From the IMG/VR virus record IMGVR_UViG_3300045974_000132, positions 124,001 to 188,000 of that record: DNA of 64,000 nt; one strand, 5' to 3'. Each line of letters opens with the position of its first letter. Position 1 is the stretch's first letter. The notes below the pieces were generated by a model. The model was given only the letters and a program-made list of their open reading frames with translations. It had not been told where the DNA came from and made no database searches. A program made the position numbers and the translations under genes. Positions 33,206-50,629 of this stretch are shown here, piece by piece.

Positions 33206-33590
33206 GCCGCTCACCTATTTTGGTAATAAGGACTCCGTCATTATCAGGAGAGTGAGCGGCTTAACAAACCAAAGTCTGTTAGTGACCCCATCCGTTTAGG
33301 TGCTGTTAGGCAGCCTTCCGGAAAGACGCATCATTCGCGGCAATTACAAGTTTAGCCCGGTTTAACGAGAGTACAATGCTCGGATCGTTCTTTATCAACT
33401 ACTCATGCCCAATCGAAACCAGGTCAGGCCCATCAGGATCGTTCTATGTATCACCCACCCCGGTGACCTCAGCCTTGCGGTAGGACCTTTCGGCACACAG
33501 AACGATTTTGGTGGACCTGGGGAGAATCGAACTCCCGTCTTGAACACTTTTATTTCAAAAGTCTCATAAGCAAAGTTGTTCCGGTAGCTA
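33206..33590 (-). ncRNA. ssrA: circularly permuted (two-piece) tmRNA
   Basis: T-arm and CAGGTCC-ACCA (33509-33540) lie upstream of the 5' strand GGGCCTG (33431); G3-U70 pair; tag ORF (A)ANDASFRKAA* at 33306-33341; outer boundaries approximate. Confidence 0.9.
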
Positions 33591-33646
33591 ATCGGCTTTA
33601 CTTACATACGATCATATTCCTTAACACGCCAATGATTACGTGTTAG

Positions 33647-34455: not shown

Positions 34456-34530
34456 TGGTTGAGGATGACGGGATCGAACCGACGACCCTCTGCTTGCAAG
34501 CAGAGGCTCTCCCAACTGAGCTAATCCCCA
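34456..34530 (-). tRNA. atypical tRNA-Ala(UGC), possibly pseudo
   Basis: U1-A72, G3-U70, ACCA; palindromic anticodon arm with a 6-nt loop TTGCAA. Confidence 0.75.
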
Positions 34531-38109: not shown

Positions 38110-38145
38110 TGGTGCCCCCGGTCGGAATCGAACTGTTAACTGAGC
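38110..38145 (-). pseudogene. 3' remnant of disrupted resident tRNA (Thr-like)
   Basis: AGCTCAGTT...GTTCGATTCCGACCGGGGGCACCA; acceptor strand complementary to GCCCCCG at 38882-38888. Confidence 0.85.
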
Positions 38146-38154
38146 TTGTGTATA

Positions 38155-38239
38155 TGGTGCTGAGGGCGGGACTCGAACCCGCGTGTCCTTTCGGAGCCGG
38201 ATTACAAATCCGGTGCTGTCGCCACTGAGCCACCTCAGC
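38155..38239 (-). tRNA. tRNA-Thr(UGU) with long variable arm
   Basis: GCTGAGG/CCTCAGC, CCGGA-TTTGTAA-TCCGG, variable arm TCC-GAAA-GGA, ACCA. Confidence 0.9.
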
Positions 38240-38242
38240 AAT

Positions 38243-38839
38243 TTAAACTTTCCTACCTCTAAAATAATCGAATGGGTTTATACCATAAGCTATAGCCCAT
38301 TTACGCACTGCGTTATCACTAACGCCGTAATGCTCACCCACCGCTACCCATGATTGCCTACTTAGGCGTTTCATAAGGTTTGCTTTACTTGGTTTTTTCT
38401 GAGTGCTACCCGCAATGAAACATTCTCGGTGAGAACTCTGACATACCGATCCGCAGTAGCTACTGTTGTCCGTAGGCATTTGACAGACTTTACAGCGGGT
38501 ACATTTTGCAAGAACTTTATCAATACAGCCGTTGTGTCGATACGAATAAATGCGGTGCTCAGAAAAGTACCCAATCGAATCAAGCCACCCATGAAGTTTG
38601 GCATGACTAGCACGGCTAAGAACTAGCAGGTTTGAAGGTGCATTATTTACCTTGTTAAGATCAAGATGGTGTACGTGTTCCGTGCGCTTTAGAGGTCGTC
38701 CTAGCGCCCGCTCTGCCACCAAGATATGCTCATAGACATACCCTTCATAAGCACCTGACTTATCGGCCCGGTCGTGAGTCGGCTGCCAAACTAGCAAGTA
38801 GCCCACATTATTTACGATCCGAACACGGTTGCGTATCAC
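38243..38839 (-). CDS. HNH homing endonuclease with C-terminal HTH
   Basis: YVYEHILVAERALGRPL...VHHLDLNKVNN...NLLVL...H; C-terminal SWVAVGEHYGVSDNAVRKW. Confidence 0.9.
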   Translation of the reverse strand: MIRNRVRIVNNVGYLLVWQPTHDRADKSGAYEGYVYEHILVAERALGRPLKRTEHVHHLDLNKVNNAPSNLLVLSRASHAKLHGWLDSIGYFSEHRIYSYRHNGCIDKVLAKCTRCKVCQMPTDNSSYCGSVCQSSHRECFIAGSTQKKPSKANLMKRLSRQSWVAVGEHYGVSDNAVRKWAIAYGINPFDYFRGRKV

Positions 38840-38877
38840 AGCGTTTCCTCTTCAAAATCAACTGCACGAATCTTCAT

Positions 38878-38888
38878 GCTACGGGGGC
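38878..38888 (-). pseudogene. 5' remnant of disrupted resident tRNA (Thr-like)
   Basis: GCCCCCGTAGC, 25 nt downstream of an AACTGTAAA box. Confidence 0.7.
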
Positions 38889-41964: not shown

Positions 41965-42297
41965 TGTGGTAAGACTCAGAAGTGCTTAACACCGTCTGAG
42001 TCAAACCGGTGTAGCTTGCGTTGTGCCAAGCAGCAATTCTCGATGGGATAGTATTGAGAAAAGCCGCATTGACTGCACCTTGCAAACTACTGATTATTCT
42101 CGCCTAAAGCGCATGGTCATCACCCTTATATAATGTTCTATATGTATGCTTGTATATAGAACCCTACTTAGATTTAAGAACTATATTAGACGTAACATTA
42201 AGTTACCCTCCAAAAGAGTTCGCTATGAGCGTAGCGGGAGCTTCTGTTCACAAGCTTGCCGGCCCGACTCTCACGGGCAGTACCTAGGGCGAAGAGT
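41965..42297 (-). ncRNA. putative structured ncRNA region
   Basis: Non-coding, hairpin-dense (GACTCAGA/TCTGAGTC, TTCTC/GAGAA, GTTCTATAT/ATATAGAAC, CGCTA/TAGCG). Confidence 0.45.
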
Positions 42298-44601: not shown

Positions 44602-45180
44602 TTAACTACCTGCGCGTCGTTTTGCATCGTTAAACTTAGATAACTGATCTTCAGTTAAGAACTGTTCCCAGCCCTCTAAGATTAGATCCGGATGAGAAGA
44701 CAAGATTGAAACAATGTCATTCAAGTCTTTGAACTCGCGCTTCAACGTGTTAGCACCAAACAACTTTAGAACAACCATTGCCTCCTTAGAAGCAACAAGT
44801 ATCCCGTCATGGTTTACTGCGGTGTGTATCACCTTCTTAGCAACGGGTATAGGTAGTTCAATTGAAGCAGGTGTTGTAAGCTCAATATCAACCTGCGTTT
44901 TGTTTTCTTGAAAGGCACCTGGCCTATAACGCTTGAAGCCCTTGACTTCAGTAGGTACTAAAGCTTTACTAAGAAACAGAAGGTCTACGTCTTCAGTGTA
45001 ACGAGGCTTTGCATAGAAAGACATTGCAAGTCCGCCGATTAAAACACCGGGAGCTTCTGTACCTACTTTAGATTTAATCCAAGCAAGTAAAGCATGTTGC
45101 ACTTCAGGAACTAAGGCTACATGCTTTACCTCAGATACTGCCGACGCATACACAGACATGTTACGAAGTATCAGTTCCAT
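44602..45180 (-). CDS. AbiEii/MenT-like nucleotidyltransferase
   Basis: LIGGLAM...PRYTEDVDL and LKL...KDLND motifs of the DNA polymerase beta-like NTase fold. Confidence 0.75.
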   Translation of the reverse strand: MELILRNMSVYASAVSEVKHVALVPEVQHALLAWIKSKVGTEAPGVLIGGLAMSFYAKPRYTEDVDLLFLSKALVPTEVKGFKRYRPGAFQENKTQVDIELTTPASIELPIPVAKKVIHTAVNHDGILVASKEAMVVLKLFGANTLKREFKDLNDIVSILSSHPDLILEGWEQFLTEDQLSKFNDAKRRAGS

Positions 45181-45193
45181 CGTTGCTCCTAAA

Positions 45194-45274
45194 GAAAGAA
45201 GACCGGGCTTCCACCGGCAGCAAGATTAAGCCGAAGCAACCTCTCTGCGTCAGATTTGGTATCCGACGACTTTC
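45194..45274 (-). ncRNA. tRNA-like cloverleaf RNA
   Basis: GAAAG/CTTTC closing stem, CGTCGGA/TCTGACG arm, TTCG-capped arm, GCCGG-TGGAAGC-CCGGT T-arm-like. Confidence 0.45.
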
Positions 45275-45309
45275 TGGTAGGCCCGGTCAGACTTGAACTG
45301 ACGACCAAA
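45275..45309 (-). pseudogene. 3' half of disrupted resident tRNA (Ile2-like)
   Basis: TTTGGTCGTCAGTTCAAGTCTGACCGGGCCTACCA. Confidence 0.9.
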
Positions 45310-45323
45310 TACTTAAACTAACT

Positions 45324-45401
45324 TAGTGGGCCCAACTGGATTTGAACCAGTGACCCTCCGGTTATGAGCCGGGCGCTGCTAACCAACTGAGCTATAGGCC
45401 C
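45324..45401 (-). tRNA. tRNA(CAU), probably Ile2 (or elongator Met); encoded end CTA not CCA
   Basis: GGGCCTA/TGGGCCC, CCCGG-CTCATAA-CCGGA, TTCAAAT. Confidence 0.88.
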
Positions 45402-45402
45402 T

Positions 45403-45993
45403 CTAAGTAAGCTTTCGTCCTCTACCTAGCTTAGGCAATAGAGTACGGCAAATTTTGGTATAGCTGCTTTTAACATGACTATAAGTATCACCGCGCAACA
45501 TTGAGAACAGGGTAAGAGGATGCACATCTAACTCTTCTGCTAGTTCATGATGGGACAATTCATACTCAGAAAAGTATTTCCTAAGGCGTTTAACTTCACT
45601 ATCTAAAAACTTTGAATTAGGTCTAAGCTCACCTCGAGGATCAACGCGCAAACCTGTTGCCAGTGCGTGTTTCACATTACCGGAATTAGTTGTCAATTCA
45701 AGATTTGTTAATCGACAGTTAGCTTTAATCCCATCACGATGGTTTAACTGTAGTTCAGAGTCCTCTGGTATCCCCTTAAAGTGCGCCCATACAAGCCGGT
45801 GCAATTGTATCTGACGAATCTTTTTAGAGTTAGGATCTTGCCAAGATAGCTTTCGATATCCTTTTGAAGAAGGAGTCTTAGCTACTTCCTTACCTGAAAT
45901 CAAATTAAAAGCTTTACCAGACTTCGTAACTTTTAACTTACCTGAGTTTATCAGGCTAAGAAAGAAGCGTTCATTTCTAAGGTTTGCCGCCAT
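45403..45993 (-). CDS. HNH homing endonuclease with C-terminal HTH
   Basis: LHRLVWAHF...NHRDGIKANCRLTNLELTTNSGNVKHA; GELRPNSKF; LSHHELAEELDV. Confidence 0.9.
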   Translation of the reverse strand: MAANLRNERFFLSLINSGKLKVTKSGKAFNLISGKEVAKTPSSKGYRKLSWQDPNSKKIRQIQLHRLVWAHFKGIPEDSELQLNHRDGIKANCRLTNLELTTNSGNVKHALATGLRVDPRGELRPNSKFLDSEVKRLRKYFSEYELSHHELAEELDVHPLTLFSMLRGDTYSHVKSSYTKICRTLLPKLGRGRKLT

Positions 45994-46033
45994 GAGGTTA
46001 GAGCAGAGTAGTGGTATAGCTCATAAATTAGTA

Positions 46034-46065
46034 TCCTCTGCTCTGACCAACTGAGCTACAGGCCT
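46034..46065 (-). pseudogene. 5' half of disrupted resident tRNA (Ile2-like)
   Basis: AGGCCTGTAGCTCAGTTGGTCAGAGCAGAGGA; acceptor pairs with CGGGCCT at 45279-45285. Confidence 0.9.
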
Positions 46066-46074
46066 AAAACTTTA

Positions 46075-46226
46075 TAAGGTTGCTTACATTCTCGATCACC
46101 TACCACCAGTAAGTCAGTGTCGATAGTTGTGATACGCTCAACGTGCAGCCCACAACTCCTATGCACGTTAAAGCTCAACTTCATCTGGACTATACATCGA
46201 CCAGTCTAGGTGTTAAGCAAACCTTA
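46075..46226 (-). ncRNA. putative stem-closed structured RNA
   Basis: TAAGGTT(T)GCTTA(A)CA closing stem; internal AACGTGCA/TGCACGTT. Confidence 0.5.
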
Positions 46227-46553: not shown

Positions 46554-46928
46554 TTACTGACGGGACTTGCGTGAAGACTTCTTGCCATCCTTGGAACCGC
46601 GCGAAGACTTTTCGGCCTTCTTCGGTTCAGCAGCAGCGGCCGCTTTCTTAGCAGCACGGGTAGAAGTCTTGGCCGGAGCAGCAGCCTTAGCAGGAGCAGC
46701 TTTGGCAGCAGCAGCAGCAGCTTTGGCCGGGGCAGCTTTGGCGGTTGCCGCAGCAGCACGGGTAGAGCGAGCCGGAGTCTTTTCGCCAGCGGTGCCGATT
46801 GCCGAAGATTGAGCAATAGTTTGATTGACAGCTTCGACAGCATCAGCAACAGCCTTCTTGGCAGCGTCGATAGCTTTGTTGGCAGCAACCAGAGAAGAAA
46901 TAGCCTTCTTGAGAGTACGAGAATTCAT
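46554..46928 (-). CDS. histone H1-like Ala/Lys-rich protein
   Basis: AKAAPAKAA repeats. Confidence 0.75.
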   Translation of the reverse strand: MNSRTLKKAISSLVAANKAIDAAKKAVADAVEAVNQTIAQSSAIGTAGEKTPARSTRAAAATAKAAPAKAAAAAAKAAPAKAAAPAKTSTRAAKKAAAAAEPKKAEKSSRGSKDGKKSSRKSRQ

Positions 46929-47016: not shown

Positions 47017-48111
47017 TTACTCGTCGTCATCACCCCAATCTTCGTCATCTTCTTCATCATCTTCTTCATCATCTTCTTCGTCGTCGGAGTCTTCATCATC
47101 CTCGTCATCTTCTTCGTCGTCGTCGGAGTCTTCATCATCCTCGTCATCACCTTCTTCGTCATCTTCTTCATCATCTTCTTCGTCGTCGTCGGAGTCTTCA
47201 TCATCCTCGTCATCACCTTCTTCGTCGTCGGCATCTTCATCATCGCCGTCTTCGTCGTCATCACCTTCTTCTTCGTCGTCCTCGTCTTCTTCCTCAGCAG
47301 CCTTACGACCTCGCTTGGCTTTCGGAGCAGCGACTTCAGCAGCAGACGCATCTTCTTGGGAGAAGACTTGAACTTCGACGCCTGCATCATTGTTGGTGTT
47401 GATGATAACGGTTTCGCCATCAGTCGTCGTAACCTGAATCAGGCCGCCTTCCAGTTGCGAAACTTCGCCTTGATACTCGGCCAGCGTGACCGTCTTGTAA
47501 ACGTACAGCGTTGCGTCTTCACCTTCGTTGCCCTTGATAGAGACAACATCCTTCAGCGGGAAGGTAGAGACTTGGACACGCTTGCTGCGTTCCTTAGCAT
47601 GACGGAACACGACATTCTCGGTAGAGAACGAAACGAGTTGACCTTCAAGCTGAACAACCAGGCGGCTGACAAGAGCGATTTGCTGACCTTCGTCAACGCC
47701 CTTGGAAGCCTTGGAACCGCGACGCGGAGCCTTGGTAGCTTTTTCGGTTGCAGCAGCGCCTCGACGCGAAGACTTCGCCGGAGCAGCTTTTGCAGTACGT
47801 GTAGTCTTGGCAGGAGCTGCCTTTGCAGCAGCGGCACCACGACGGCCACGAGCCGGCTTTTCTTCAACTTCTTTTGCAGCACGACGACCACGTGCCGGCT
47901 TTTCAGCGGCAGCAGCCTTGCTTGAGCGAGTAGAGCGTGCCGGCTTTTCAGCAGCGGCAGCAGCGCCACGACGACCACGAGCCGGTTTTTCTTCAACTTC
48001 CTTTGGTGCGCGACGACCGCGAGTAGAGGTCTTTTCAGCGGCAGCAGCGCCACGACGGGTTGAGGTCTTTGCCGGGGCAGCCTTGGAACTACGGGTTGAT
48101 GCACGAGCCAT
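47017..48111 (-). CDS. basic-repeat / acidic-tail nucleoid-like protein
   Basis: N-terminal EKPARGRR repeats, central beta domain, C-terminal Asp/Glu tract of over 80 aa. Confidence 0.8.
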   Translation of the reverse strand: MARASTRSSKAAPAKTSTRRGAAAAEKTSTRGRRAPKEVEEKPARGRRGAAAAAEKPARSTRSSKAAAAEKPARGRRAAKEVEEKPARGRRGAAAAKAAPAKTTRTAKAAPAKSSRRGAAATEKATKAPRRGSKASKGVDEGQQIALVSRLVVQLEGQLVSFSTENVVFRHAKERSKRVQVSTFPLKDVVSIKGNEGEDATLYVYKTVTLAEYQGEVSQLEGGLIQVTTTDGETVIINTNNDAGVEVQVFSQEDASAAEVAAPKAKRGRKAAEEEDEDDEEEGDDDEDGDDEDADDEEGDDEDDEDSDDDEEDDEEDDEEGDDEDDEDSDDDEEDDEDDEDSDDEEDDEEDDEEDDEDWGDDDE

Positions 48112-50018: not shown

Positions 50019-50030
50019 TGGTGCCCGTAG
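50019..50030 (-). pseudogene. 3' remnant of disrupted resident tRNA (Leu-like)
   Basis: CTACGGGCACCA; CGGGC pairs with GCCCG at 50625-50629. Confidence 0.6.
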
Positions 50031-50038
50031 CACTTTAT

Positions 50039-50123
50039 TGGTGGGCGGAAAGGGACTCGAACCCTTACACCTTGCGGCTGCGGGTTTTAAGCCCGCTGCG
50101 TCTACCGATTTCGCCACCCGCCC
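50039..50123 (-). tRNA. tRNA-Leu(UAA)
   Basis: GGGCGGG/TCCGCCC, GCGGG-CTTAAAA-CCCGC, variable arm, ACCA. Confidence 0.95.
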
Positions 50124-50595
50124 TTAACATCTATAGCCAGTTAGAGCATTACCGTACTGGTTTGCTTTGAAGTACCTAGAGCGGCATGAGTGGGAGCAGA
50201 ATGCAACCTTAACACGCTTCTTAGAATAAACTTCTCGAACAAACCCAGAACACTTTGCACAATAAAGCTTTACTGGTTTTCCGTAAAGCTGGACTTGCTG
50301 CTTTTTACGATTCTTAGTTCCAGATAGCAACTGAAGATTACGAAACTTATCATTTCTAAAGTTGCCGTCTTTGTGATCTACTTCTTCAGCGGAAGTTAAA
50401 AACCGACCAAGCTTTATTTCCAACTCTAGCATATTGCCTAGCTGTCCGTTTCACGCTATCGTACAGGATAACGATCTTTCGTCCATCTTTTCTTTTATAC
50501 GGGCCGTACACCTTAAACGCATTTCCGTACAAAGCAACAAAGTCAGTGTAAAAAGTTGAGTACGGCTTACACTTTGTTTTAGACTTTGCTGGCAT
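50124..50595 (-). pseudogene. frameshifted HNH homing endonuclease
   Basis: N part GPYKRKDGRK...QYAR (50595) and C part LEIKLGRFL...VDHKDGNFRND...NLQLL are in different frames, shifting near 50425. Confidence 0.8.
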
Positions 50596-50608
50596 TTTGG
50601 TCCTTTGT

Positions 50609-50629
50609 TACCAATTTCCCCACCCGGGC
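50609..50629 (-). pseudogene. 5' remnant of disrupted resident tRNA-Leu
   Basis: GCCCGGGTGGGGAAATTGGTA, a Leu-type acceptor and D-arm start. Confidence 0.75.

What the first reader, a model, noticed from the sequence alone, without database searches (positions are those of the whole stretch)
45275..46065. Cleanest cassette: a 724-nt insert replaces the anticodon loop of an Ile2-like tRNA
Seen: the 5' half ends exactly at the anticodon stem (…GAGCAGAGGA, 46034) and the 3' half resumes at TTTGGTC (45309). Joining them with about 10 nt (e.g. CTCATAATCC, inferred) gives a canonical tRNA. The insert 45310-46033 starts TACT and ends AGTA. It holds a CTAATTTA motif, an intact HNH and a full CAU tRNA ending CTA rather than CCA. 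No group I intron core is visible. Both halves are still nearly unmutated, suggesting a recent event; they could still pair around the insert in the precursor RNA.
Basis: partly seen in the sequence, partly recalled or inferred. Interest (0 to 1): 0.8.

Follow-up and report, generated by a model that had tools for sequence, protein, structure and literature searches.

The report
Endonuclease-plus-tRNA cassette splitting a phage tRNA
A selfish DNA-cutting enzyme gene travelling with its own spare tRNA gene sits in the anticodon loop of a jumbo-phage tRNA gene and has destroyed it, with no self-splicing intron to repair the damage; this is an uncommon variant of a known kind of mobile element.

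Summary
On the minus strand, a 32-nt tRNA 5' piece (46065-46034) and a 35-nt 3' piece (45309-45275) flank a 724-nt insert. The insert holds a 40-nt leader, an intact I-HmuI-like HNH gene and a complete tRNA(CAU). Ninety-six viral contigs carry uninterrupted homologues. No group I core is detectable at E<=10, although the same search finds such introns in relatives. About a dozen metagenomic relatives (HNH 45-85% identical) show the same nesting. In one (L153), similarity to the window begins and ends at the outer tRNA's ends and the flanks are unrelated, so the unit is a discrete module. In another (L013), removing the insert restores a perfect tRNA, which places the insertion in the anticodon loop. 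I read this as an intron-less homing-endonuclease cassette that brings a replacement isoacceptor tRNA. The "recent event" claim fails, because relatives only 74-77% identical in DNA share the junctions. The leader is an inverted copy of the tRNA's D-arm-to-anticodon segment and forms a hairpin ending at the HNH start codon. No RNA or enzyme data exist.

The parts
46189..46216 (-). Sigma-70-like promoter match (TTAACA-16-TATAGT), about 120 nt upstream of the 5' piece. Weak evidence only.
   Evidence: The number of such matches in the region is not above the shuffled expectation.
46067..46185 (-). Conserved non-coding stretch upstream of the 5' piece, containing a hairpin (AACGTGCA..TGCACGTT).
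   Evidence: Aligns with L002 at 77%. The stem shows a compensated change in L002. It is absent from L153, so it belongs to the phage flank rather than to the module.
46034..46065 (-). 5' piece of the split Ile2-type tRNA: positions 1-31, comprising the acceptor strand, the D arm and the 5' strand of the anticodon stem (GAGGA).
   Evidence: It differs at 3 of 32 positions from the commonest natural intact homologue.
45994..46033 (-). 40-nt leader of the cassette with conserved elements ACTAATTTATGAG and CTCTGCTCTAACC. It is an inverted copy of the tRNA segment from D loop to anticodon loop.
   Evidence: TTATGAG is the reverse complement of CTCATAA, and TGCTCTAACC of GGTTAGAGCA. Conserved in window, L002, L153, L018 and L053.
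45996..46048 (-). Hairpin. The 13-nt arms 46048-46036 (D arm of the 5' piece) and 46008-45996 (leader) are 12/13 complementary. The 3' arm ends 2 nt before the HNH ATG, and there is no Shine-Dalgarno sequence.
   Evidence: I3. Folds: -19.6 kcal/mol in the window, z from -1.8 to -4.3 in six loci. Also present in the fold of the whole precursor.
45403..45993 (-). Intact HNH homing-endonuclease gene (196 aa), I-HmuI-like, with a C-terminal helix-turn-helix-like part.
   Evidence: Pfam HNH_3 7e-11; PDB 1u3e 2e-6; phrog_59 2e-29 and phrog_517; 16 homologues at 45-85% identity.
45327..45401 (-). Complete inner tRNA(CAU), Ile2-like, followed by CTA rather than CCA. It starts 1 nt after the HNH stop codon.
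   Evidence: 99% identical to that of L002 while the surrounding DNA is 77% identical. Its stems change with compensation in L153. Its best E. coli matches are genes labelled tRNA-Ile (80%, E 9e-5), against tRNA-Met (77%, E 0.2).
45310..45326 (-). 17-nt spacer CTAAGTTAGTTTAAGTA between the inner tRNA and the 3' piece. TAAGTTAGT can pair with ACTAATTTA of the leader (8 Watson-Crick pairs and 1 G-U).
   Evidence: The spacer start is the same in L002 and L153. The pairing is read from the sequence and is not tested by covariation.
45275..45309 (-). 3' piece of the split tRNA: variable loop, T arm, acceptor strand, discriminator A and CCA. The 3' strand of the anticodon stem is lost (TCCTT in L002, L153 and a metatranscriptome variant).
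45202..45218 (-). Terminator-like hairpin followed by a T-rich run, downstream of the unit. Weak evidence only.
   Evidence: not above the shuffled expectation.
38110..38888 (-). Second cassette of the same design. 5' relic GCCCCCGTAGCA (38888-38877); an unrelated HNH_3 gene (38243-38839); a full tRNA(TGT) (38155-38239); a 3' relic consisting of part of a T arm, then CGGGGGC, A, CCA (38134-38110).
   Evidence: No group I signal, although many homologues of this HNH lie inside group I introns that split tRNA(CAU) genes.
50019..50629 (-). Third cassette. 5' relic of a Leu-type tRNA (50629-50607); an HNH_3 gene broken by one frameshift (50595-50124); a full tRNA-Leu(TAA) (50039-50123); a 3' relic CGGGCACCA (50027-50019).

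Best explanation
This is an intron-less homing-endonuclease cassette. An I-HmuI-type HNH endonuclease gene is physically coupled to its own tRNA(CAU) gene, and the pair sits in the anticodon loop of an Ile2-type tRNA(CAU) gene.

Inferred mechanism:
- The enzyme nicks or cuts the DNA of uninterrupted tRNA(CAU) genes around the anticodon stem-loop.
- The break is repaired from a cassette-bearing genome. The two tRNA halves that flank the cassette serve as homology arms.
- The insertion destroys the enzyme's own target, which gives self-immunity.
- The inner tRNA has a different anticodon stem and D stem. It escapes cutting and supplies the decoding function that the split gene has lost.

In the window the outer gene is dead as a decoder, because 10 nt including the anticodon are gone.

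Expression is probably kept low in two ways. A hairpin between the D arm of the 5' piece and the antisense leader buries the translation start. RNase P processing of the inner tRNA would cut the mRNA 1 nt after the stop codon.

Shown: the anatomy, its recurrence, the module boundaries, the absence of a ribozyme and the conservation of the inner tRNA. Inferred: cleavage specificity, homing, immunity and regulation.
For: 1. Anatomy, with an intact HNH gene.

2. Uninterrupted homologues of the target exist in 96 viral contigs as 49 distinct tRNAs, and exactly 10 nt are replaced.

3. The same nesting occurs in relatives:
- L002, L153, L013, L018, L053 and L052 have 5' piece, HNH, tRNA(CAU), 3' piece.
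- L051 has HNH only.
- L050 and L010 have the inner tRNA ahead of the HNH.
- L008, L015 and L006 show a 5' piece only.

4. In L013, removing a 644-nt insert between U33 and C34 restores a canonical 77-nt tRNA(CAU).

5. Similarity between the window and L153 runs exactly from 46064 to 45275, the ends of the outer tRNA, and the flanks are unrelated. L013 and L018 have almost identical outer pieces (100% and 96%) but cassettes whose HNH proteins are only 49% identical.

6. Within a locus the 5' and 3' acceptor strands pair 6.4/7 on average, against 3.9/7 between loci. T stems pair at 40/40 positions, while junction-near anticodon stems pair fully in only 2 of 7 loci. This fits arms whose distal parts come from recipient genes and whose proximal parts are co-converted or damaged.

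7. The inner tRNA is under purifying selection. It is 99% identical between window and L002 against 77% for the surrounding DNA, and its stem changes in L153 are compensated.

8. There is no group I core in the window or in ten related loci. The same tool finds group I introns in L006 and in eight loci of another HNH family.

9. In L006, a homologous HNH sits beside a tRNA(CAU) whose anticodon loop is interrupted by a group I intron. This points to the anticodon loop as the target.

10. Two more cassettes in the window, with unrelated HNH_3 genes, pair a relic with a full tRNA that appears to be of the same type. For Leu this rests on a 23-nt relic; for the other cassette it rests on short relics and remembered Thr sequences. 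One of these HNH genes is already frameshifted, as the life cycle of such elements predicts.

11. There is precedent for an endonuclease gene abutting a tRNA and for endonucleases that cut tRNA genes: T4 SegB (PMC2330249).
Against: - No cleavage, homing or RNA data exist. Only DNA metagenomes hold this phage.
- No syntenic relative with an empty site was found.
- L051 has no inner tRNA, so the spare tRNA is not obligatory.
- The arms are only about 32-35 nt, which is short for homologous repair.
- Three close relatives have three different, perfectly paired T stems in the 3' piece. L153 and L002 differ by two doubly compensated pairs. This could instead mean that the 3' piece is under selection for an RNA role.
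- How the first nested arrangement and the inverted-repeat leader arose is unexplained.
Confidence: 0.62

Rival explanations
1. It is an intron. The 724-nt insert is removed from the precursor and the outer halves are joined into a working tRNA-Ile2.
For: - The insert lies in the anticodon loop, the classic site of bacterial tRNA group I introns.
- In L013 the outer gene is complete once the insert is removed.
- Relatives of the second HNH family do sit in true group I introns of tRNA(CAU) genes.
- The predicted fold closes the insert with the outer acceptor stem.
Against: - In the window, the anticodon and the 3' strand of the anticodon stem are absent, so no excision can give a tRNA.
- No group I or other ribozyme signal appears at E<=10 or in ten related loci at E<=1, with positive controls.
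- Only 40 nt and 17 nt of non-coding, non-tRNA sequence are available for a ribozyme.
- Anticodon stems are broken in 5 of 7 loci.
Confidence: 0.04
2. It is a decayed group I intron. An HNH-bearing group I intron of a tRNA-Ile2 gene lost its catalytic core, and the lineage survived because a second tRNA(CAU) came to lie where the core was. On this view the unit is a relic rather than an actively homing cassette.
For: - The leader keeps TTATGAG, complementary to the exon sequence CTCATAA. It lies about 10-30 nt into the insert, like the ATGAG that pairs with exon CTCAT in the group I introns of L185.
- HNH-bearing group I introns in tRNA(CAU) are common in large phages.
- L006 combines a homologous HNH with an intron-bearing tRNA(CAU).
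- The window's second HNH belongs to a family that is usually intron-borne, yet it has no intron here.
Against: - The CAU-cassette HNH is unrelated to the intron-borne family, and none of its own relatives lies inside an intron.
- The insertion point in L013 (33/34) differs from the intron site (36/37).
- The module occurs in unrelated flanks and with different cassettes in the same target. Both speak for continuing mobility.
- The HNH gene is intact and conserved.
Confidence: 0.15
3. The outer pieces are kept for an RNA function. Together, the acceptor stem and T arm form a tRNA-like 'top half' that frames the HNH-tRNA transcript. This could serve RNase P and 3'-end processing, stability, or excision from a polycistronic tRNA transcript. 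Alternatively the halves act as a split tRNA-like molecule.
For: - T stems are intact in all 8 loci, with doubly compensated differences between close relatives.
- Acceptor strands match within each locus.
- CCA is encoded at the end of the 3' piece.
- The minimum-energy fold of the whole 801-nt precursor pairs the two acceptor strands and keeps the T hairpin (z -2.7).
Against: - Recipient-derived distal arms after each homing event predict the same pattern.
- The D arm of the 5' piece is tied up in the leader hairpin.
- The acceptor stem pairs only 5/7 in L153.
- L008, L015 and L006 lack a 3' piece, and the other two cassettes of the window keep only 9-25 nt of theirs.
Confidence: 0.15
4. It is an assembly chimera or a chance resemblance.
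For: The source is a metagenome-assembled contig.
Against: - The identical sequence is found in an independent Logan contig of the source sample at 17x, and in a second pond sample.
- The same architecture appears in about a dozen independent assemblies.
Confidence: 0.01

Closest known systems
T4 SegB and the HNH endonucleases of the T5 tRNA region: free-standing homing endonucleases in phage tRNA clusters (PMC2330249)
   Same: - An endonuclease gene lies in a phage tRNA array and abuts a tRNA, so that tRNA processing cuts its mRNA at the stop codon.
- The enzyme's target is tRNA-gene DNA.
- Preferential inheritance of the tRNA region is the expected outcome.
   Different: - SegB is a GIY-YIG enzyme and recognises T-loop DNA.
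- It lies between genes and leaves no split tRNA around it.
- Here the gene sits inside a tRNA gene, between that gene's two halves, and brings a tRNA of the same kind.
HNH-encoding group I introns in the anticodon loop of tRNA genes: bacterial tRNA introns reviewed in PMC3984707, and phage examples found here (L185, L172, L179, L157, L164, L175, L176, L171)
   Same: - The same place (anticodon loop of a tRNA(CAU)) and the same enzyme class.
- The same flanking exon-like halves with matching acceptor strands.
- A leader element complementary to the exon sequence CTCAT.
   Different: - There is no catalytic core.
- The exon sequence is incomplete in the window.
- A whole tRNA gene lies inside the insert.
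- Function is rescued at the DNA level by a spare gene, not at the RNA level by splicing.
Collaborative homing: the free-standing F-CphI beside an intron-bearing psbA, and mobE with I-TevIII (PMC6083498, PMC2790892, titles and abstracts only)
   Same: An endonuclease gene lies next to a protected copy of its target and moves together with it. L006 (HNH beside an intron-bearing tRNA(CAU)) looks like exactly this.
   Different: In the window the protected copy is protected by sequence divergence, not by an intron. The sensitive copy is still present as two relics around the pair.
I-HmuI of Bacillus phage SPO1 (PDB 1u3e)
   Same: The closest solved relative of the protein (E 2e-6 over residues 18-115). 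It has the same HNH_3 architecture followed by a DNA-binding tail.
   Different: I-HmuI is intron-encoded in a DNA polymerase gene and nicks one strand (my own knowledge). The sequence relationship is distant. Whether the window's enzyme nicks or cuts is unknown.
Genes split by endonuclease insertion that still work in pieces (MobE in nrdA of phage Aeh1) and split tRNA genes of Nanoarchaeum (both from my own knowledge, not read here)
   Same: A gene is cut in two by, or is found as, separate halves that could pair.
   Different: Those halves together hold the complete functional sequence. Here the anticodon is missing, and a separate complete gene does the work.

Membership tests
Group I intron in a tRNA gene | Catalytic core (P3-P9) recognisable by a covariance model | tested here: not met
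   No Intron_gpI match at E<=10 in 28000-52000, and none at E<=1 in ten related loci. The same tool scores 56-84 bits on introns in L006 and in eight loci of another HNH family.
Group I intron in a tRNA gene | Flanking exons that join into a complete tRNA | tested here: not met
   The window pieces joined give no tRNA, and 10 nt are missing relative to natural homologues. The feature is met in the relative L013.
Group I intron in a tRNA gene | Splicing of the transcript | not testable with these tools
   No RNA run holds this phage.
Free-standing HNH homing endonuclease gene | His-Me finger (HNH) domain with its conserved residues | tested here: met
   Pfam HNH_3 7e-11; PDB 1u3e 2e-6; all invariant columns of the 17-sequence alignment are present.
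Free-standing HNH homing endonuclease gene | Patchy presence: the same target exists uninterrupted elsewhere, and the element occurs in different genomic contexts | tested here: met
   96 contigs carry the uninterrupted tRNA. The module is bounded by the tRNA ends, with unrelated flanks in L153. Different cassettes occupy the same target in L013 and L018. No syntenic empty site was found.
Free-standing HNH homing endonuclease gene | Own genome protected: target disrupted or altered | tested here: inconclusive
   The presumed target is split by the insert. The inner tRNA has other anticodon-stem and D-stem sequences but the same loop, CTCATAA. The recognition site itself is unknown.
Free-standing HNH homing endonuclease gene | Site-specific cleavage of the element-free allele, and preferential inheritance in mixed infection | not testable with these tools
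   Needs protein and phage work.
Split or permuted tRNA gene (Nanoarchaeum type) | The halves together encode the whole mature tRNA and carry a splicing motif at the junction | tested here: not met
   The anticodon and the 3' strand of the anticodon stem are absent. The 5' strand pairs with the leader instead.
Integrase-type element in a tRNA gene | An integrase gene, and a direct repeat of the tRNA 3' part at both ends | tested here: not met
   The only ORF in the insert is the HNH gene. The ends are complementary halves of one tRNA, not a repeat.

The most novel reading that the evidence does not exclude
A ribozyme-free, self-compensating mobile cassette may form a class of its own. It would consist of an endonuclease gene plus a spare isoacceptor tRNA, and would home into tRNA genes of otherwise unrelated phages using only the two tRNA halves as portable homology arms. 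The retained outer acceptor stem and T arm, kept paired by compensated changes, would act as a tRNA-like frame that lets RNase P and 3'-end enzymes cut the endonuclease mRNA out of tRNA-operon transcripts. The antisense-tRNA leader would gate its translation.
Probability: 0.25. Interest if true: 0.75.

Novelty: new variant of a known kind. Interest (0 to 1): 0.6.

Why it matters
Homing endonucleases normally avoid harming their host gene in one of two ways. They ride in self-splicing introns or inteins, or they sit between genes. Here the element sits inside a gene with no splicing device, and it appears to pay its way by bringing a replacement gene.

One phage carries three such cassettes, and relatives cover a graded series:
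- HNH inside a group I intron;
- HNH beside an intron-bearing tRNA;
- HNH plus a spare tRNA;
- HNH alone.

Together these give a natural system for asking three questions: how such elements gain and lose introns, how tRNA arrays of large phages are reshuffled, and why phage genomes hold tRNA fragments that gene finders miss or call pseudogenes.

The practical point is that orphan tRNA halves flanking an HNH gene mark a former tRNA gene. The tRNA inside the cassette is the functional one.

Tried and rejected
- Group I intron or other ribozyme in the cassette: none at E<=10.
- ARAGORN in intron mode does not call the outer genes, even in L013. I therefore removed the inserts in silico.
- TACTAATT as a repeated signal: 5 copies in the window against 2.3 expected, 12 of 100 shuffles reach this, so it is not significant.
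- Exact search for the joined tRNA with a gap in IMG/VR: no hit.
- Leader pattern ACTAATTTATGAG..GCTCTAAC: in IMG/VR it finds only the source contig. In genomes it finds 30 Clostridium loci, which are a chance match inside a conserved coding gene.
- RNA evidence: two searches found only DNA runs of pond metagenomes that hold the phage. The 'RNA' runs hold other organisms' tRNAs or short pieces of a relative.
- Syntenic empty site among the 96 contigs with the intact tRNA: tblastn with eight neighbouring proteins found nothing.
- Cultured phages: no HNH homologue above 37% identity, and those found split tape-measure or polymerase genes rather than tRNAs. The tRNA array of Vibrio phage Ceto holds a 92% match to part of the inner tRNA but no HNH gene.
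- E. coli match for the 37-nt stretch 45273-45309, which holds the 3' piece: none.
- A 9-nt perfect inverted repeat outside both pieces (46085-46077 and 45242-45234) is within chance expectation for 1 kb.
- Population variation in the L002 lineage: four contigs are identical.
- The short ORF 46056-46184 upstream is not conserved in L002.
Full report
WHAT IS THERE

The window is part of a 286-kb IMG/VR phage contig, and the tRNA region is transcribed on the minus strand. At 46065-46034 lies a perfect tRNA 5' part: acceptor strand, D arm and the 5' strand of the anticodon stem (GAGGA). At 45309-45275 lies a perfect 3' part: variable loop, T arm, acceptor strand, A and CCA. Between them are 724 nt:
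- a 40-nt leader;
- an HNH_3 gene, 45403-45993, I-HmuI-like;
- one base later, a complete tRNA(CAU), 45327-45401;
- a 17-nt spacer.

THE SPLIT GENE

An exact search with the sequence suggested by a loose contig end found 99 IMG/VR stretches. Of these, 96 could be analysed, and they hold 49 distinct tRNAs. All read GAGGA CTCATAATCC TTTGGTCG in the centre, with varied acceptor and T stems. Those letters include the anticodon and most of the 3' strand of the anticodon stem. Joining the pieces gives no tRNA. The outer gene is of the Ile2 (CAU) type by its anticodon stem and variable loop. This assignment partly rests on my memory of E. coli ileX.

The inner tRNA is also closer to genes that RefSeq labels tRNA-Ile (80%, E 9e-5) than to tRNA-Met (77%, E 0.2).

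NOT AN INTRON

A permissive Rfam scan of 28000-52000 (E<=10) gives no group I or other ribozyme in the cassette. Ten related loci are equally blank at E<=1. The tool is not blind, however. It finds a group I intron in the tRNA(CAU) next to a homologous HNH in L006. It also finds group I introns of 42-84 bits, all but one above Rfam's gathering score of 50, around HNH genes of a second family in eight phage loci. In those loci the introns split tRNA(CAU) genes just after CAT.

RELATIVES

The HNH protein has 16 homologues, all from metagenomes, and none above 37% identity in cultured phages. Nearly every homologue whose DNA could be fetched lies between tRNA relics.
- L002 (85%), L153 (83%), L052, L053, L013 and L018 have the order 5' piece, leader, HNH, tRNA(CAU), 3' piece.
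- L051 is from a relative of this phage. It has HNH alone between the halves, and its stop codon lies in the CATAA of the old anticodon loop.
- L050 and L010 have a 5' relic, a full tRNA, then HNH, then a short 3' relic. L016 shows only the short 3' relic, and no clear relics were seen in L017.
- In L008, L015 and L006 I saw only a 5' piece.

In L013 the outer gene is complete. Cutting out 644 nt between U33 and C34 gives a canonical 77-nt tRNA(CAU). The insertion site is therefore the anticodon loop.

A DISCRETE, MOBILE MODULE

Similarity between the window and L153 (74% over 792 nt) begins at 46064 and ends at 45275, the ends of the outer tRNA. The flanks do not align.

L013 and L018 share outer pieces (100% and 96%), but their HNH proteins are 49% identical and their inner tRNAs differ.

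Within loci, the acceptor strands of the two pieces pair 5-7 of 7 (mean 6.4). Across loci the mean is 3.9. Each pair of pieces therefore comes from one tRNA, and different tRNAs have been hit.

Between window, L153 and L002 the junction-near parts are shared. The distal parts (acceptor strand, T arm) differ by whole compensated stems. The junction-near anticodon stems are broken in different ways:
- the window keeps GAGGA but lost TCCTT;
- L002 keeps TCCTT but has GATAA;
- L153 keeps both.

I read this as arms whose distal parts derive from the recipient gene at each homing event, as with the co-conversion gradients known for homing (established knowledge). Selection on the 3' piece is the alternative reading.

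NOT RECENT

The junctions are shared by cassettes that differ by 23-26% in DNA. Over the same span the inner tRNA stayed 99% identical (window versus L002), or changed only by compensated pairs (L153). It is therefore the functional gene.

THE LEADER

TTATGAG is the reverse complement of the anticodon loop CTCATAA, and TGCTCTAACC is the reverse complement of the D-loop/D-stem sequence GGTTAGAGCA. The leader is thus an inverted copy of the upstream tRNA segment. In L053 both arms are 29 nt.

The resulting hairpin is seen in the window (12/13 pairs) and in L002, L018, L053, L013 and L015, with z from -1.8 to -4.3. It ends 0-5 nt before the start codon, and there is no Shine-Dalgarno sequence.

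By analogy with other phage endonuclease genes (own knowledge; PMC2330249 discusses processing-based control), I propose that it limits translation.

The same ATGAG-to-CTCAT pairing exists at the 5' end of the true introns. This keeps open an origin from a decayed intron.

The hairpin also occupies the D arm, which argues against a cloverleaf made from the outer pieces. Even so, the minimum-energy fold of the whole precursor pairs the two acceptor strands.

THE PATTERN REPEATS IN THE WINDOW

Two further HNH_3 genes, unrelated in sequence to the first, each stand directly upstream of a full tRNA. Each pair lies between short relics.
- For the Leu cassette, the relic is Leu-like.
- For the TGT cassette, the relic looks Thr-like, judged from short relics and remembered sequences.

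The Leu one is frameshifted. The TGT one belongs to the family that is usually intron-borne, yet it has no intron here.

VERDICT

Best model (0.62): an intron-less homing-endonuclease cassette that carries a replacement tRNA.

Rivals:
- decayed intron relic: 0.15;
- RNA role for the retained halves: 0.15;
- true intron: 0.04;
- artefact: 0.01.

No cleavage, homing or transcript data exist.

Noticed in passing
window 33215-33601 (-): A two-piece (permuted) tmRNA gene in a phage. Rfam tmRNA_permuted scores 89 bits, and ARAGORN gives the tag peptide AANDASFRKAA. Relatives L018, L172 and L185 also carry tmRNA genes near their tRNA arrays.
   Followed up: no
window 34456-34530 (-): A tRNA whose anticodon stem CTCTG/CAGAG encloses an 8-nt loop, CTTGCAAG. 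ARAGORN reports a 4-base anticodon 'tgca'. It could be a quadruplet decoder or a 6-bp stem with a 6-nt loop.
   Followed up: partly
window 38155-38239 (-): The tRNA inside the second cassette has a Thr anticodon (TGT) but is 85 nt long with a long variable arm. That shape is normally limited to Leu, Ser and Tyr tRNAs in bacteria.
   Followed up: no
window 42215-42295 (-): Near-threshold match to the twister-sister self-cleaving ribozyme: 30 bits against a gathering score of 34, E 0.006, over the full model length.
   Followed up: no
window 44602-45180 (-): An AbiEii-like nucleotidyltransferase ORF (Pfam 7e-7) lies directly downstream of the cassette. At the same place, L002 goes straight to the homologue of the next gene. 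A toxin-like gene therefore sits at a recombination boundary next to the tRNA relic.
   Followed up: partly
window 50124-50595 (-): The HNH gene of the Leu cassette is in two frames, with one frameshift near 50430-50440. It is either a decaying endonuclease gene or an assembly error at 17x coverage.
   Followed up: partly
window 47017-48111 (-): A 364-aa protein with many basic KAAPAK/ARGRR-type repeats and a long Asp/Glu tail. The DNA repeats attract much cross-mapping from other organisms at about 46626-46726.
   Followed up: no
L185:1884-2000 and L172:1014-2020: In group I intron-bearing tRNA(CAU) loci of the second HNH family, extra orphan halves occur. L185 has a second copy of the 3' exon 75 nt downstream. 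L172 has two nested pairs of matching 5' and 3' pieces around one HNH gene.
   Followed up: partly
L050:1306-1405 (also L010, L016, L017): A 97-100-nt tRNA next to homologous HNH genes is called Gly(ccc) by ARAGORN. It also offers a perfect 5-bp stem ATCGG/CCGAT with loop CTTATAC. That reading gives anticodon UAU (Ile, AUA codon), the same codon read by the split Ile2-type tRNA.
   Followed up: partly
window 46067-46185 (-): A conserved non-coding stretch upstream of the cassette contains a hairpin whose stem changes with compensation in L002. Its function is unknown, and no Rfam family matches it.
   Followed up: partly
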